DNA of 64,000 nucleotides from Stylophora pistillata (taxonomy: Eukaryota). Shown here piece after piece: positions 13,920-45,303 of the stretch (position 1 is the stretch's first letter; every line of letters begins with the position of its first letter). The position numbers were made by a program, and so were the translations under genes. The notes beneath the pieces are model-generated. The model was not told the DNA's origin. It saw only the letters and a list, made by a program, of their open reading frames with translations, and did not search any database. The stretch spans positions 547,529 through 611,528 of the forward strand of contig NW_019217861.1 of the NCBI RefSeq assembly GCF_002571385.2. The letters are read 5' to 3'.

Positions 13920-16900
13920 CTATGAGAGAGATTTAAACTTTCTTTTCATGATTCTAACAATACAACACTCATTTCCGTTAACATCTGGATACCCCTTATC
14001 GCTGAAGCCTTCCAATGCTGGACACACGTCCTGCCAACGGTCATTAAATTGCTGCAGTTCTCCTTTAACGGCTTTCTGTGACGGTCCGTCAAGAATTTCA
14101 CATACGTCCTTTCCAAGCCGGTTGACTCGATCAACCTTGACTTGCATTGATGGCTTTTCCTCTAGTTTAATCTAGAACGAAGAAAAAGGGTGAATGTTGC
14201 ACATTAAGAAAAAGAGAGGTCAAATATCTGCAGAAGTTTATTTTTGCGTTCTATTTGTGAAGATACCAATTTGCCAAAGATGAATCAGTTTGTCTCGAAT
14301 TCGATGATTCTTTGAAGCTGCATCAGTGGAATAGTGTCAATAATATTTCTGCGCTGTTTGATGGGTCGAGGCGATCCTATTATGCTGACCAACATCGATG
14401 AAGTGATGAGTAAAACTCAGGTCAATAAACAAAAGATTGAGGCTTTAGTTCCACCAAAAGCGAAAATCTAATGGCTTAGCTAATGAAATGCCGCACAACG
14501 TACAAGTACCTGAGCTCTTTTCTTAAGGTTCTCTTGCTCGTCAGAAGGCAAATCTTCTTTGTATTCATTCATCAACGCTTTCCCGTCGTCCACCCACTGA
14601 TTAACAGAATCCACCAGGTCATACATCTCTTTCATTTTGTTTTGGGTATTTACCAACTAGACGGAAGAGAAAATAAACATGCAAATTATTACAATGTGGG
14701 GGATAGGAGGGCACAAAGCCATCCCATTAATCGAGGCTTTTCATGTCCCTGACGAGTAATTTCCCGTTTTCCACCATTTCCAATCCTGTTCACTAACTTA
14801 ATTCGTCTATCTTCGTTCCCTTCACAGATTTGCCTCGTTGATAGAGGCAGTAAAAGGTATAGGGATTTTAACCTACGATCTTTCTCTTTATTTATCGATT
14901 CCATAAGTTGCAGATAACATATTACTAACTCTCTCTGCTCTTGTGATCGTAAGCTGCAAAAAATTCTTCTGACTCTAAATTAATCTGAAATAGCAGTAGA
15001 GATATTGGGCGACTCTGCCACAGAACTTCAATCACTGTGTTAATGCAATCGACTTTCATGGCTAAGCAAAGTACAACAGGGTTCCACAAAATGTTGCTCA
15101 ACACTTTAGATGCAAGATTGTTTTTAGAAACCAGTAAAATATCTATGTTTACACACCTTTTCCTTTTCATCAATGACTCTCTTGGCAACATGATTCCAGC
15201 AGTCGTCAAAGTCTTGTAATTGTGCTTCAATTTCCTTTGTTGTCTCTTCGTCGCTACCCGAATCCTCAATAAGGTCTTTCCCCAATTGACGGAGCCTTTG
15301 CAGTCTTTCCTCCTGTTCTTCAAGCTCCTTCTGAGTTGTCTGTTGGTATATTTACAAACTTGATAAAACTGGATCAATCGATCATTATACGTGTGGCCGA
15401 ATTTTTTATCTTTTAAGGAATGACTTTCAAAATTATTTCAAAGAATGCAGGTGATTAATACAAAATGGCGTGGAGAAGGAATATCCTCTGAATGAGAATT
15501 ATATCTCTCGAAACCGAAGGAAAGTCAAACATCTTGCACTACCACTGAATTATTCTAACTAGGTGTAATACTTACCTCAAGAAGTTCAAGGCTTTCCTTG
15601 ACCTGTTGTTCGTCAGCAACATCAGTATTCGACACCTCTTTGAGAGTTTTCTCTTTCTGGCTGAGCCAGTTTAGAAGAATAAGTTCTTCATCTCGAAATT
15701 TCTGCCAGTCGATCATTGCTTTGGTTAGTTTCTGGTTTCGATCCTCACTCCAATTCCAGGCCGTTGCCCACCTTTCGTTCACAGTTTTGATTTGTTCGCG
15801 AGTTTTACCATCCAAATCTGGGTCTGTTGAATCAATCCTCATTACCGAAGCCACTAAAGACATGTCACCAACTCCTTCTTGAAATTTCTGAGGTAAAAAA
15901 AAAAAACCGCATGCTCAACATATTGCTATCAATAAACTTACGAGTTTTTACCAATGAGCTTTTTCTTTGTCTATCGATACTTTTCTTTTCCCGTGTTAAA
16001 CATTGAAAGTACGCATATGCTCTTTGCCAGTTCGCATGGGGCATGAATACCTCGATGTAACATGAAAACATTGATTTGACAATTACCTGATGTTCCTCCA
16101 ACTGCTCCTTAACAGTTTCGTAGGTAGGGCCAATGTCATCTTCTTTGTCCATCTTTTGCTCGGCCTTTTTCAACCATATGGTCATTTTGTTTAACTGCTG
16201 TTTCAAAAGTACGGATCTCTCCTGTGAAAGCCTAAGCGGGAAAAAAACAAAACCAAAAAAACAACTACGTTAATAACTTAGCTTGTTTGATTCACATCTA
16301 ACGTATTCAAGGTGGTAGTACTTAATCGTTTTCGAGAGTAAATGTCAACTCTGCTCTTCGATCAATTTTAATGAGCAGTAAAACATAGCACGGGGTCATT
16401 CACTGTTACAATAATCATATCCCTGAACAACTCACTTGTCCTGATCCCTCTGGGATTGCTCAAGAAGATTTTGCAACCTTTTATCGACGTTATCCATCCG
16501 GTCTTGGAAGTGCTCCTTTTCACCTAAATCAAAGTATCCTTCCCCTATCAACGATCGTCCTTCATTCAAAACTTCATAAGTACGAGACTTTACTGGCTCA
16601 AGGTCCTGGCGAAATTTCTGTTTAGAATTAAAAAAAATTTAAATGAAAAAGTAGTTCTCTTCTGTCTAATGAGTTATCTTACTGTTGACGAAAGGCACTT
16701 TTGACATTTCCAGCCCTGGCAAAAAGGCGTCAATTACGTCACTGCTCAAACTCAGATAGCCCATTAACAATGATTGAAGTGATGAAAATTATGATTTTTA
16801 AGTAAAAATAGGTAGGTCATCGCTCAATCTTTACGAGGGATGAATATTGATACATAGTCAGCACGTCATGCATTACAGTAACGAATTTCCAACCTGTTGT

Positions 16901-42800: not shown

Positions 42801-45303
42801 GTTCGTGCACTTCATTAAGGTGCTAAAAAAAGCAGGAGATGTATACTAACATCGAGATCTCCCCATTAGATAAACCACCATAATGGAGCTGAGTGGCGTG
42901 AACGGAATATTTTAATGAAATTTGATTAGTAAGCAGTGCATCTTTACAATGTTAAATAATAGTTAGGAAATCTTGTCTGTTTAGCTAGTGAAGAGCAGTT
43001 AAGGTATTTTATGGTCATGTTTGGAAAGAATAGTAAAAATAGTTTCCAATTAAAGATGGAAGAGAATATGATACTTGATTAAGTATTGCCTGGAGCGATT
43101 AAGACGAAAAACTTTGCATTAAGCAATAGAACACATTTTTCCGGGCTCTGCGACGTTATAAAGCCACGTGGGATGTTGGGAGTCTCCCTGTGTCCCAAGG
43201 GGCTTCATCATGTTATAGAGCCCGGAAAAATGTGTTCTGTTGCTTTAATGACATAAATGATTGTCACCGATCAAATGTAGGCTCTATAACCCAATAAAGC
43301 ATCCGCTTAGAATCTGAATTGACCTATTAGACGATGCGTACTATGTTCATTAATGTTATAATTGCAAATAAACACTGCCTCTATCTGACCATGTGAAGTC
43401 CTAGAGCTTCCATTTACAACTCACAGGTGCTCCAGTCTTCTTTCTCTTCTCGAGATTAGGTCCTAAGTGAACGTTGGGCGGCAGTGTGGACGTGGGCAGA
43501 AGAATGGAAAAAGAAGCTTAACAAAGCCCTTATGGACTGGAATAAACTTCGTGAGGAAGAGACTGTTTTACTGTCGTGGCTGTCAAGTAAAGAACAAACT
43601 ATGGATGTCATTAGCCAAACGGACATCACAGATGAGGAACAAGTGAAAATGCACTTGAATTTGCTGGAGGTATGAATTGAGTCGATTGGCAATTAAAACC
43701 ATTGAAACTCCTTGTTTGTTTCTGCTTTACAGCGGCTCTAGGCTCTGCTTTACCATCTTTCGTCTTTTCACTTTTTCTTCTCCAACAGACATTAGAGCGC
43801 GAAATGGAGGCACAAGGCACACGTCTGGAATCTCTCCATCAGATTGGAGAGGAACTTATTAAAGATGCTGACTATCACAATTCAACTGCTAAAGCTATCT
43901 GGGACCAGTTGGAAGACTTTGATGAATGCTGGACAGGCATTAGTAACTCAGTCAAGGAGAGGAAAGTAGTGGTGAGTGATTTAAAAAAAACCTAAGCAAC
44001 ACTTACCGTTGATTTTTTTTCTCGATTTGTTAGCACTTATAGGTGATTCCCCTGTTCTTCCCTTTCGAAAACAAATCCAACCAAAAATGGCTCTATTACA
44101 TGAATAGTCGACAGCTCTGGTGAGTTTGAAGTAAAAATTCTCAGCAATTCCTTAAAATATTACCAGTAAAAATAAAAGTTGTTTTAAAACTGCTTTTGGA
44201 TGATAACCACAACGTAACTGATAACAATGTCATATTGCAAATACACTTTTCAGCTTCAAGACGCCCAAAGTAAGGTGAAACGGATGGGGGATTTGATGAA
44301 AGAAGTTCGAACCTGGATGGACGAGGCAGAAAAGCTTATCAAATATATACGATTACAAAGTGACCCAGAAAAGGAAAACAAAATTCAAGAAAAGATAGAG
44401 GTAAGGCTAAAAATGTGTTGTGGACTTTACTATATGTTCCATCAGAAGTTATGTAGCCATTGAATACGAACAATCTTTCATCCGAATCCATGACTGTGTT
44501 TTGTCTCGATCATGTAACAGAATGTCGAAGCTCAGTTAGCTATAAGGAAGGGCACCTGTTTGTTCTACGTAGACTTGATGGAAGAAGTGATGTGACAGCG
44601 GGTGTAGCCCATTTCCGTCTACATAAAGCTGCTCATTCACACTTGTAAACATTCCTCAAGAAGTTTCGCCTGACCACTTCCATTCGAAAAAAAATTAAGG
44701 TTATCTTCTACCTTCAATTCCTATTCACACAAAAAAGAAGACTCTTCTACCAGTTTTTAAACAGTTAGTCTTGTTAAAGAAAGACTTCTAAGGCGCAAAT
44801 CTTCTGATGCACACAACTTAATACATGCACTTTCCAAGAAAGTTGTAGAGGTTTGACTAAAACTCTAAGCCTGCAACGGGACAAGTTTCTTGACAAATTT
44901 TTGTTGCTAAATAAATAAGGAAGACTCTCTATTTGTTGAGTGTTTTGCTAGGGCAGCAATAGCTTCCTGACATTATGTTTAAGGAGAAAGAGATGATTTC
45001 GCTCTTTTTTTCAATACCTTTAAAAAAAGCAGCTCTGTTTTCGCCATTTTTCAGCTCAAATGCGAGGAAAAAGACAGAAATCAGCTAAAAGTCGACGAGA
45101 TCAATCGACTGGAGGAAGACCTAAGCTCAAATATCGACAAGAGGTCCAACTACTACTTGAAAAAAGTCACCAAACCATTCAACAAGCGTTGGGATGACAC
45201 AAGAATTGCCCTGGACAGATATCGTAATGACGACTACCCGTTTGTCAAGCCAGATGACTGCTTCCTTGTGAAATGTTTAAAGAAAGCCCTCGTAGTTAAT
45301 TGA
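30840..45303 (+). CDS. Short dystrophin/utrophin-family protein B (CH1-CH2, long hinge, about 4 spectrin repeats, about 1033 aa)
   Basis: 23 phase-consistent exons: 30840-30867 (tentative first exon), 32231-32292, 32835-33008, 33320-33412, 33671-33753, 33969-34052, 34391-34503, 34771-34907, 35335-35523, 36039-36125, 36455-36586, 37775-37837, 38132-38359, 38519-38721, 39164-39217, 40228-40381, 40672-40853, 41575-41719, 42370-42471, 43460-43669, 43789-43971, 44254-44400, 45055-45303. Motifs RVFTRWIN, SWMDGLAFNALLH, VLSERWAAVWTW. Rod exon sizes 154/182/145/183/147 are identical to gene A. Confidence 0.88.
36818..37100 (+). mobile_element. tRNA-derived SINE
   Basis: Pol III A-box-like (tggttagaacgc) and B-box (ggttcgagccc) head; body shared with 41009-41128. 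Confidence 0.75.
40912..41130 (+). mobile_element. tRNA-derived SINE, same body as 36818-37100 but different head
   Basis: B-box ggttcaagtcc; shared body ttctcggataag...ccgtaggtcc...gcacgagattac...ggatgtcctccccggggtggga. Confidence 0.7.
41941..42210 (-). mobile_element. LINE (L2-like) 3' end fragment
   Basis: ORF2-tail-like IRALRDVPTLSQFKRGIKKALF* followed by an AT-rich UTR and a (TTA)n-type tail. Confidence 0.5.
42485..42815 (-). mobile_element. Penelope 3' fragment with hammerhead (42556-42592)
   Basis: CTNKFDCLV*EMFFIHKLRPALNVQSDSIRAKVF; cac-TTGACAA-t-gaccg..cggtc-GAAACGTC-gtg. Confidence 0.85.
43117..43250. repeat. Short hairpin / MITE-like inverted repeat
   Basis: aagcaatagaacacatttttccgggctct ... 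agagcccggaaaaatgtgttctgttgctt arms. Confidence 0.65.

What the first reader, a model, noticed from the sequence alone, without database searches (positions are those of the whole stretch)
13920..45303. Head-to-head pair of natural 'micro-dystrophin' genes lacking the whole dystroglycan/syntrophin-binding half
Seen: two complete, stop-free spliced ORFs on opposite strands with start codons about 7.5 kb apart. Each encodes CH1-CH2 and about 4 spectrin repeats, then stops in a homologous last exon. Knowledge: the sequence and exon sizes (62, 78, 93, 182 nt; 210 = 102+108) match my recollection of vertebrate DMD exons 2, 4, 5, 11 and 14+15. Canonical dystrophin/utrophin has 22-24 repeats plus WW-EF-ZZ and coiled coils. 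Inference: this is a stand-alone N-terminal-only dystrophin subfamily. The paralogues are strongly diverged yet stop at the same place, which argues for an old, selected architecture rather than a broken gene. I know of no described stand-alone family like this.
Basis: partly seen in the sequence, partly recalled or inferred. Interest (0 to 1): 0.85.

Follow-up and report, generated by a model that had tools for sequence, protein, structure and literature searches.

The report
Short dystrophin paralogue pair in coral
Two neighbouring coral genes on opposite strands each encode a short relative of dystrophin that keeps only the actin-binding head and about four rod repeats. Each ends in its own conserved cysteine-rich basic tail, and the family is old, under selection in corals and sea anemones, and not described in any paper I could search.

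Summary
Gene A (minus strand, 23377 to 13121) is a 17-exon, 757-codon, stop-free ORF. RNA-seq joints confirm every intron from 18722 downwards. A poly(A) tail sits 16 nt after an AATAAA, about 800 nt past the stop, and no joint leads onward.

Gene B (plus strand, ATG 30840, stop 45301-45303) mirrors A exon for exon, apart from an unresolved 5.3-kb linker region. The start codons are 7,463 nt apart. The assembly gap lies in the spacer, inside a high-copy inverted-repeat transposon, and touches no exon.

The actin-binding domains form a well-supported clade with a sea-anemone protein and a full-length orthologue from another coral. That clade is sister to canonical dystrophin/utrophin, not to nesprin, plakins or spectrin. 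Eleven of 13 intron positions of this coral's own full-length dystrophin (a different contig) are shared with A.

All members end 14-26 residues after a conserved Cys-Cys/hydrophobic/basic motif. No WW, EF-hand or ZZ domain is present.

The divergent pair is conserved in another coral, and a third paralogue lies on another contig. Both genes show purifying selection.

Still open: expression of B, and what the tail does. Membrane anchoring is my inference.

RefSeq auto-names the anemone member "dystrophin isoform X"; I found no paper on the family.

The parts
23305..23377 (-). Gene A exon 1, coding part: ATG at 23377, 24 codons plus 1 nt, donor GTAGGG in phase 1. The 5' UTR upstream is not mapped.
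   Evidence: Conserved in ORF, length and donor position in another coral's locus, L036. An in-frame stop lies 17 codons upstream. The RNA contig holds about 634 nt upstream of exon 2.
18724..21072 (-). Gene A exons 2-6, encoding CH1 and the start of CH2: 21011-21072 (62 nt), 20562-20657 (96), 19912-19989 (78), 19247-19339 (93), 18724-18821 (98).
   Evidence: Splice sites and frames. Pfam CH. 73% identical overall to the transcript-derived orthologue P0344.
14510..18625 (-). Gene A exons 7-16, encoding the rest of CH2, the hinge and spectrin-like repeats: 18542-18625, 18331-18446, 17678-17769, 17394-17500, 16894-17047, 16436-16617 (182 nt), 16087-16231 (145), 15576-15887 (312), 15157-15339 (183), 14510-14656 (147).
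   Evidence: Every intron is seen as a CT..AC joint on the plus strand in RNA runs, or in the 3,658-nt contig. The frame is continuous. Pfam Spectrin, and a weak Spectrin_SYNE1 match.
13121..14171 (-). Gene A last exon: 83 coding codons (14171-13923), stop at 13922-13920, 799-nt 3' UTR, AATAAA at 13142-13137, poly(A) site at 13121.
   Evidence: Depth is continuous to about 13120 and zero below 13016. Contig ends at 13121/13123 carry adapter sequence, and one also carries a non-templated T-run on the plus strand. The tail and stop are conserved in more than 12 coral assemblies.
30840..30867 (+). Gene B exon 1, coding part: ATG at 30840, 9 codons plus 1 nt, donor GTAAGA in phase 1.
   Evidence: Same length, reading frame and donor in the other coral's locus, L036. 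A TGA lies three codons upstream.
32231..34907 (+). Gene B exons encoding CH1-CH2: 32231-32292 (62 nt), 32835-33008 (174, which equals A's 96+78 fused), 33320-33412 (93), 33671-33753 (83), 33969-34052 (84), 34391-34503 (113), 34771-34907 (137; this donor is the least certain).
   Evidence: Homology to A, with matching phases and GT/AG sites. With exon 1 this gives 774 nt in frame with no stop. The fused exon is also fused in the B orthologue of L036.
34908..40227 (+). Gene B linker region, unresolved. It holds at least one conserved exon at about 35335-35528 and a strong acidic ORF at 38132-38359. Repeats lie at about 36.8-37.4 kb.
   Evidence: tblastx block 35419-35526 against L035 4474-4581. 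An ab initio stop-free chain exists. The sea-anemone relative has a linker of about 425 aa at the same place. No RNA evidence.
40228..45303 (+). Gene B rod and tail exons: 40228-40381 (154 nt), 40672-40853 (182), 41575-41719 (145), 42370-42471 (102), 43460-43669 (210), 43789-43971 (183), 44254-44400 (147), 45055-45303 (82 codons plus TGA).
   Evidence: Same sizes and phases as A; 102+210 equals A's 312. Exons 102 and 210 are 86% identical to another coral's contig, with the intron at the same place and 35 of 46 differences at third codon positions.
23378..30839 (.). Divergent spacer between the two start codons (7.46 kb). It includes a conserved non-coding block at 30480-30575.
   Evidence: blastn blocks are colinear with L036. 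The block has no ORF.
28610..29851 (.). Transposon-like insertion with 172-nt terminal inverted repeats (28610-28781 and 29680-29851, 98% complementary). It encloses the assembly gap at 28784-29234.
   Evidence: The arm occurs at 95-100% identity on at least 40 other contigs, sometimes as inverted pairs about 1.1 kb apart.

Best explanation
A and B are two of at least three members, in this coral, of an anthozoan family of short dystrophin paralogues. The family arose by duplication of the 5' part of a dystrophin gene. A and B are themselves an old inverted duplication, kept head to head.

Each protein has four parts:
- a tandem calponin-homology actin-binding domain;
- a hinge, expanded in B to a long low-complexity linker;
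- about four spectrin-like repeats, colinear with dystrophin repeats 1-3 plus one more;
- a family-specific C-terminal tail of about 30 residues. In A-type members it runs DKGYP, then an acidic residue, Cys-Cys, two hydrophobic residues, then a basic/hydrophobic cluster. The protein ends 14-26 residues after the cysteines.

There is no WW, EF-hand, ZZ or coiled-coil part, so the protein cannot bind dystroglycan or syntrophin the way dystrophin does.

Shown: gene structures, A's splicing and polyadenylation, family membership, conservation and purifying selection.

Inferred (about 35% for the specific mechanism): the head binds F-actin and the tail fixes the rod to a membrane or a partner. Acylation of the paired cysteines plus the basic cluster would do this, in the manner I recall for GAP-43-type dual-cysteine motifs. 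The result would be a cortical actin linker that works without dystroglycan.

The confidence given is for the identity and architecture, not for the tail mechanism.
For: - A's structure, splicing, strand and poly(A) end.
- B's mirror-image exon structure with the same sizes and phases.
- ABD tree: the short family is monophyletic (99/98) and sister to dystrophin/utrophin, including this coral's canonical gene (100/97). Nesprin plus calmin come next (95/87).
- Rod tree: short family 100/100.
- Eleven of 13 introns of the coral's canonical dystrophin N-part fall in the same alignment column and phase in A, four of them in the rod. Shared exon sizes are 62, 96, 78, 93, 116, 92, 182, 145 and 183.
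- The canonical dystrophin, with its own CH exons and EF-hand_2, lies elsewhere, at G000:C3 about 1.030-1.077 Mb.
- Pfam finds only CH and Spectrin in the full-length relatives P0344, P0008 and P0098.
- The tail and stop are conserved in A orthologues, B, the third paralogue, L035 and Nematostella.
- A against its orthologue: pN 0.145, pS 0.75. B exons: 35 of 46 differences at third positions.
- The head-to-head pair is conserved in another coral.
Against: - B's expression, linker exons and 3' end are untested.
- B's ABD sits on a very long branch (1.86), and the tool warns about its join with the Nematostella row.
- Monophyly of the canonical dystrophins to the exclusion of the short family is only 94/71. 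The age of the split is therefore open.
- Sampling lacks Nematostella's canonical dystrophin, hydrozoans and most invertebrates.
- By raw score against solved ABDs, beta-spectrin (207 bits) lies between utrophin (210-217) and dystrophin (204-205).
- The tail's helical hydrophobic moment is not significantly above shuffles (fractions 0.08-0.3).
- Acylation and membrane binding are inferred by analogy only.
- The single-sequence structure model is poor (pLDDT 43).
Confidence: 0.8

Rival explanations
1. The proteins are actin cross-linkers rather than membrane linkers. With a head and about four repeats, they would pair antiparallel through the rod as alpha-actinin does. The tail would then be a regulatory site (calmodulin or kinase) or a partner-binding site.
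For: The architecture, ABD plus about four repeats, equals alpha-actinin's apart from the C-terminal EF hands. The tail has a basic/hydrophobic cluster followed by Ser/Thr in A-type members. The tail is not clearly amphipathic.
Against: The ABD is not in the alpha-actinin clade. As I recall, dystrophin-type repeats are thought to be monomeric. The paired cysteines are the best-conserved tail feature and are not explained by this reading. Dimerisation was not tested here.
Confidence: 0.2
2. The short proteins act mainly as soluble competitors or regulators of canonical dystrophin. They would occupy the same actin or lipid sites without linking to dystroglycan.
For: The same head and R1-R3-like modules as the canonical gene in the same genome. 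No dystroglycan-binding part.
Against: This does not explain the strongly conserved, family-specific tail or the retention of three paralogues. The ABDs have diverged far from the canonical one.
Confidence: 0.12
3. B is a decaying or non-expressed duplicate, and only A is functional.
For: There is no RNA evidence for B. Its ABD is on a very long branch, at most 41% identical to the A-type head. A repeat-bearing 988-nt intron splits what is one exon in A.
Against: All 16 modelled exons are open and in phase. B-type exons are conserved in several other corals and a more distant anthozoan, with third-position-biased change and the same intron. Exon 1 and the fused exon 3/4 are conserved in L036.
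Confidence: 0.07
4. The family derives from nesprin/calmin or a spectraplakin rather than from dystrophin.
For: Two rod exons of A give weak, sub-threshold Pfam matches to Spectrin_SYNE1. Nesprin-like clusters rank second and third in the language-model search.
Against: The ABD tree places it with dystrophin/utrophin at 100/97, with nesprin plus calmin outside. Canonical utrophins hit Spectrin_SYNE1 too. Intron positions match the coral's dystrophin. Pfam reports no KASH domain.
Confidence: 0.04
5. The short ORFs are 5' fragments or alternative 3' ends of longer genes, or an assembly artefact around the gap.
For: There is an assembly gap between the genes, and B's 3' end is unverified.
Against: A has a poly(A) tail and AATAAA after its last exon and no onward joints. 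The stop is conserved across assemblies and in a 764-aa transcript ORF. No further rod or WW/ZZ exons lie in the 13.9 kb and 18.7 kb downstream. The gap sits inside a transposon in the spacer. Synteny holds in another coral.
Confidence: 0.03

Closest known systems
Canonical dystrophin / utrophin, including this coral's own gene on G000:C3
   Same: Tandem CH actin-binding domain in the same clade. The first three rod repeats are colinear. Eleven of 13 intron positions and many exon sizes are shared. Full-length human dystrophin is the top match among solved chains.
   Different: About 4 repeats instead of more than 20. No WW, EF-hand_2/3, ZZ or coiled coil. It has its own conserved Cys-Cys/basic C-terminal tail. 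Separate loci and three copies.
RefSeq models 'dystrophin isoform X2/X7 [Nematostella vectensis]' (P0098, P0008)
   Same: Same family: ABD in the same clade (99/98), rod 100/100, same tail motif, and no C-terminal dystrophin domains.
   Different: Automatic names only. The linker is long (about 425 aa), as in B. The protein runs 26 residues past the cysteines. It groups with B rather than A in the rod tree, at moderate support (86/84).
Alpha-actinin
   Same: Overall design: ABD followed by about four spectrin repeats, about 750-900 aa.
   Different: The ABD is in another clade. There is no C-terminal EF-hand domain. Dimerisation is unknown.
Calmin and N-terminal nesprin isoforms
   Same: Short proteins with a CH-CH head and a C-terminal membrane-targeting element instead of a long rod.
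   Different: These form the next-nearest ABD clade, not the same one. Their anchor is a transmembrane or KASH segment. Here there is only a short Cys-Cys/basic tail and no KASH hit.
Engineered micro-dystrophins, and the apparent split of dystrophin into two proteins in Rotifera (review PMC10293626)
   Same: Use of the head plus R1-R3 as a working module. The rotifer case shows that the two halves can be encoded apart.
   Different: From my own knowledge, micro-dystrophins keep the cysteine-rich dystroglycan-binding domain. Here the full-length gene is also present, so this is a paralogue family and not a split.

Membership tests
Dystrophin/utrophin (canonical architecture) | N-terminal tandem CH actin-binding domain of the dystrophin type | tested here: met
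   Pfam CH x2 in the orthologues. The ABD tree gives short family plus dystrophin/utrophin at 100/97.
Dystrophin/utrophin (canonical architecture) | Long rod of about 20-24 spectrin-like repeats | tested here: not met
   About 434 residues of rod, roughly 4 repeats. No further rod exons in the window.
Dystrophin/utrophin (canonical architecture) | WW, EF-hand_2, EF-hand_3 and ZZ dystroglycan-binding region | tested here: not met
   Absent from P0344, P0008 and P0098, but found in utrophin P0040 by the same scan. The transcript ends after the last exon. EF-hand_2 loci in the genome lie on other contigs.
Dystrophin/utrophin (canonical architecture) | Shared gene structure with dystrophin | tested here: met
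   Eleven of 13 intron positions and phases of the coral canonical gene are shared with A, and 10 with B. Whether other CH-spectrin genes share the rod positions was not tested.
Short dystrophin-like family with Cys-Cys/basic tail (this report; includes Nematostella P0008/P0098) | Protein ends 14-26 residues after an acidic residue, Cys-Cys (Cys-Phe in B), two hydrophobic residues and a basic cluster that follows the last repeat | tested here: met
   A, B, the third paralogue, L035, P0344, Nematostella and more than 12 coral fragments.
Nesprin (SYNE) | C-terminal KASH transmembrane domain, and an ABD in the nesprin clade | tested here: not met
   No KASH hit. The ABD lies outside nesprin plus calmin. 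Only sub-threshold Spectrin_SYNE1 matches, which utrophin also gives.
Alpha-actinin | C-terminal calmodulin-like EF hands, and an ABD in the actinin clade | tested here: not met
   No EF-hand family hit. Actinins branch near the root of the ABD tree.
S-acylated membrane anchors of the dual-cysteine/basic type | Acylation of the paired cysteines and membrane association | not testable with these tools
   Only the sequence pattern is seen. The hydrophobic moment is not significant.

The most novel reading that the evidence does not exclude
The family is an ancient sister lineage of dystrophin. It would be at least as old as the split between stony corals and sea anemones, and possibly older than the cnidarian-bilaterian split if the 94/71 node holds. 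It would link cortical actin to membranes through an acylated Cys-Cys/basic tail. That would be a second, dystroglycan-independent solution to the dystrophin task, kept in three copies in corals.
Probability: 0.25. Interest if true: 0.75.

Novelty: new variant of a known kind. Interest (0 to 1): 0.6.

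Why it matters
Dystrophin is normally discussed as one long adaptor whose point is to join actin to dystroglycan. A conserved, expressed, multi-copy family keeps only the head and the first rod repeats and has its own tail. This shows that the N-terminal module has had a selectable job of its own for a long evolutionary time.

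It offers a natural comparison for what the head plus R1-R3 can do without the dystroglycan-binding half.

It also gives a short motif, the Cys-Cys/basic tail, that can be tested directly in Nematostella, where knock-outs and tagging are routine.

There is a practical warning too. Automatic names such as 'dystrophin isoform X7' hide a separate gene family, which can mislead counts of dystrophin genes in cnidarians.

Tried and rejected
- Exon 1 of A was not found by similarity to the other coral's transcript N-terminus, to Nematostella's, or by motif search. A weak minus-strand match at 30563-30634 had no donor and was dropped. Exon 1 was found only through cross-species DNA conservation.
- The conserved block at 30480-30575 was considered as B's exon 1. 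It was rejected because it has no ORF.
- Searching with utrophin residues 1-270 returned only fish utrophins and added no diversity to the tree.
- Contig look-ups for P0008 and P0019 found nothing. Those for P0001 and P0003 gave contigs too short to help.
- The single-sequence AlphaFold model of P0344 was too poor to use for fold search.
- The idea that the tail is a clear amphipathic helix is not supported by the shuffle test.
- Cluster look-ups for taxon names of distant exon-level hits gave no names, so the family's range outside Anthozoa is unknown.
- No complex prediction was run. The report makes no binding claim that it could decide, and the monomer model was poor.

Full report
**Scope and rules kept.** The window is a stony-coral contig (G000:C78:547529-611528; the RNA runs are labelled coral). 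The N runs were neither filled nor looked up.

Joined spliced models of A and B were built only inside local scripts, from window references. They were used for frame checks, alignments, trees, and comparisons with sequences already fetched. The joined models were not sent to any database search tool. Database searches used single exons by reference, or natural full-length relatives returned by the tools (P0344, P0008, P0098).

**The gap first.** The N runs are at 1831-2502, 12805-12815, 27308-27330 (scattered), 28784-29234 and 59198-60007. The flagged gap at 28784-29234 lies between the two start codons. It is 5.4 kb upstream of A's ATG (23377) and 1.6 kb upstream of B's (30840), so no exon or reading frame crosses it.

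The gap is enclosed by 172-nt inverted repeats at 28610-28781 and 29680-29851, 98% complementary. That arm occurs at 95-100% identity on at least 40 other contigs (863 first-look candidates), sometimes as inverted pairs about 1.1 kb apart. The gap therefore sits inside a young, high-copy transposon, which is a likely reason the assembly broke there.

Order and orientation across the gap agree with an independent assembly of another coral. Four blastn blocks are colinear from B exon 3/4 through B exon 2 and a non-coding block to A exon 1.

**Gene A (minus strand).** Laying four RNA runs on 12816-18815 gave the following:
- The stranded raw-read run laid with first mates only on the plus strand, which in most stranded libraries means the RNA is from the minus strand.
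- Ten joints with CT..AC ends, which are GT..AG on the minus strand.
- A 3,658-nt transcript contig that also carries the intron at 16232-16435.

The exons fixed this way, plus five upstream exons placed by splice sites and homology, read through in one frame.

Exon 1 was found only by cross-species conservation. Window 23303-23459 matches the other coral's locus upstream of its exon 2. In both species there is an ATG, 24 codons and a GT donor in phase 1 at the same place.

The full CDS is 2271 nt, 757 codons, with no stop. The stop codon is at 13920-13922.

Depth runs unbroken from 14171 to about 13120 and is zero below 13016. One polyA-library contig ends at 13121 with a run of T followed by adapter, read on the plus strand. 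Another ends at 13123 with adapter. The genome has no A-run there, and AATAAA lies 16 nt upstream. No joint leaves the last exon. A is therefore an expressed, spliced gene, polyadenylated about 800 nt after its stop.

**Gene B (plus strand).** tblastx and tblastn show B's exons in mirror order to A's. With A's phases imposed, every block has good AG/GT sites:
- B exon sizes: 62, 174, 93, 83, 84, 113, 137, then the linker, then 154, 182, 145, 102, 210, 183, 147, and 246 plus stop.
- A's matching sizes: 62, 96+78, 93, 98, 84, 116, 92, 107, 154, 182, 145, 312, 183, 147, 249.

B's exon 1 has an ATG at 30840, 9 codons plus 1 nt and a GTAAGA donor, with a TGA three codons upstream. The other coral has the same length and the same donor.

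The start codons are 7,463 nt apart.

B's 5.3 kb between 34908 and 40227 is unresolved. One exon at about 35335-35528 is conserved in a distant anthozoan, and the sea-anemone relative has a linker of about 425 aa at this place. A stop-free GT-AG chain can be drawn, but several of its tiny exons are doubtful.

I could not test B's expression, because the single reads call was used on A.

B does, however, show purifying selection. Its 102- and 210-nt exons are 86% identical to another coral's contig, while the intron between them does not align and differs in length (296 against 988 nt). The intron sits at the same position. Of 46 differences, 35 are at third codon positions and 1 at second. B-type exon fragments occur in several other assemblies.

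**What the proteins are.** Pfam finds CH and Spectrin on single exons, and a weak Spectrin_SYNE1 match. The full-length relatives also hit CH (two domains) and Spectrin, with only weak sub-threshold matches to two other families. In the same kind of scan a fish utrophin shows WW, EF-hand_2, EF-hand_3 and ZZ.

Relatives found:
- P0344, a 764-aa ORF from another coral's RNA contig. It has an upstream in-frame stop, is 73% identical to A, and ends at the same residue.
- P0008 and P0098, RefSeq 'dystrophin isoform X7/X2 [Nematostella vectensis]', 927 and 1137 aa.
- A B-like gene in a more distant anthozoan contig.

The rod spans about 434 residues, roughly four repeats.

**Relation to dystrophin.** This coral has a separate canonical dystrophin on contig C3. 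Its CH exons are at about 1,029,767-1,034,657 and its EF-hand_2 at about 1,075,909-1,076,577, on the same strand.

In an ABD tree of 38 rows, A, B, P0344 and the anemone protein form one group (99/98). That group is sister to dystrophin/utrophin, including the coral's canonical gene (100/97). Nesprin plus calmin come next (95/87), then plakins, beta-spectrins, alpha-actinins and filamins.

Two cautions apply. B's branch is very long, and the tool warns about its join with the anemone row. The node uniting the canonical dystrophins to the exclusion of the short family is only 94/71.

Independently, 11 of the 13 introns of the canonical gene's N-part fall in the same alignment column and phase in A, and 10 in B. 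Four of the shared positions are in the rod. The exon sizes 62, 96, 78, 93, 116, 92, 182, 145 and 183 recur.

The comparison with the coral's own gene is the tested version of that argument.

Raw scores against solved structures put full-length human dystrophin first. At the ABD level they barely separate utrophin (210-217 bits), beta-spectrin (207) and dystrophin (204-205).

**The tail.** After the last repeat all members carry a short conserved tail. In A-type sequences it is DKGYP, a few residues, an acidic residue, Cys-Cys, two hydrophobic residues, Arg/Lys, Ile, one residue, then Lys-Arg-Lys-Phe-Lys, and the end. More than 12 coral assemblies stop at the same residue or nearly so.

B, the third paralogue, the distant anthozoan and the anemone all keep the acidic/Cys-Cys/hydrophobic/basic core; B has Cys-Phe in place of Cys-Cys. 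They end 14-26 residues after it. Between A and its orthologue, tail codons have pN 0.11 against pS 0.73.

A 12-residue helical hydrophobic moment is not significantly above shuffles, so I do not claim an amphipathic helix. The idea that the paired cysteines are acylated, and that together with the basic cluster they hold the rod on a membrane, is an analogy from my own knowledge of dual-cysteine/basic anchors. It is not a result.

**Age and copy number.** The divergent pair is conserved in another coral, with the exon 2s 14.6 kb apart (11.2 kb here), and B's exon 3/4 is fused there too.

In the rod tree B groups with the distant anthozoan gene (95/96) and the anemone protein joins them (86/84), with A-type outside. 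This suggests the A/B split predates those lineages, but sampling is thin.

A third paralogue lies at G000:C77 about 604,953-608,170 on the minus strand. It has the same tail and stop. Its intron in the exon-13 region seems to sit where the canonical gene has one.

A against B shows pN 0.43 with synonymous sites saturated. A against its orthologue shows pN 0.145 and pS 0.75.

**Novelty.** Full-text searches found reviews of dystrophin evolution that deal with the C-terminal signature and with full-length cnidarian dystrophin, and that note an apparent split into two proteins in rotifers (PMC10293626, PMC1790709). None describes an N-terminal-only paralogue family. The sequences themselves are in public databases, either under automatic names or as 'hypothetical protein'.

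**Verdict.** I rate this a new variant of a known kind:
- B's transcript and the function of the tail remain open.

Noticed in passing
G000:C77:604953-608170 (minus); locus L037 1945-5171: A third short dystrophin-like paralogue in the same genome. Its last exon ends with the same motif (DKGYP, then Cys-Cys, a hydrophobic/basic cluster, then stop). Its intron in the exon-13 region seems to sit where the canonical dystrophin has one. A CH1-like exon lies 43 kb upstream, at C77:651487-651588, and may or may not belong to it.
   Followed up: partly
window 28610-28781 and 29680-29851: 172-nt inverted repeats (98% complementary) around the assembly gap. The arm is a high-copy young repeat: at least 40 copies at 95-100% identity, and 863 first-look candidates. 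Elsewhere it is also found as inverted pairs about 1.1 kb apart, so it looks like a small TIR transposon.
   Followed up: yes
window 30480-30575: Non-coding block about 74% identical to the other coral's spacer (L036 3822-3918). It lies about 270 nt upstream of B's ATG and has no ORF. It may be a promoter or 5' UTR element of B.
   Followed up: partly
window 32835-33008: B has lost the intron between the exons that are 96 and 78 nt in A and in canonical dystrophin. The fusion is shared by the B orthologue in another coral (L036 744-565).
   Followed up: yes
window 42472-43459: The 988-nt B intron that splits what is a single 312-nt exon in A. It holds a repeat also present at window 2920-3045 and 57791-57895. 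The orthologous intron in another coral is only 296 nt.
   Followed up: partly
window 36950-37160 and 41000-41190: A repeat that translates as a Pro/Gly-rich string in several frames. It also matches the distant anthozoan locus L035 (6646-6697) in all three frames, so it is probably a widespread mobile or non-coding element rather than an exon.
   Followed up: no
window 46565-47107 (minus) and 876-968: A 181-codon open frame that reads like a retroelement fragment downstream of B, and a short open frame with a cysteine-rich pattern near the window's start. Neither was scanned against families.
   Followed up: no
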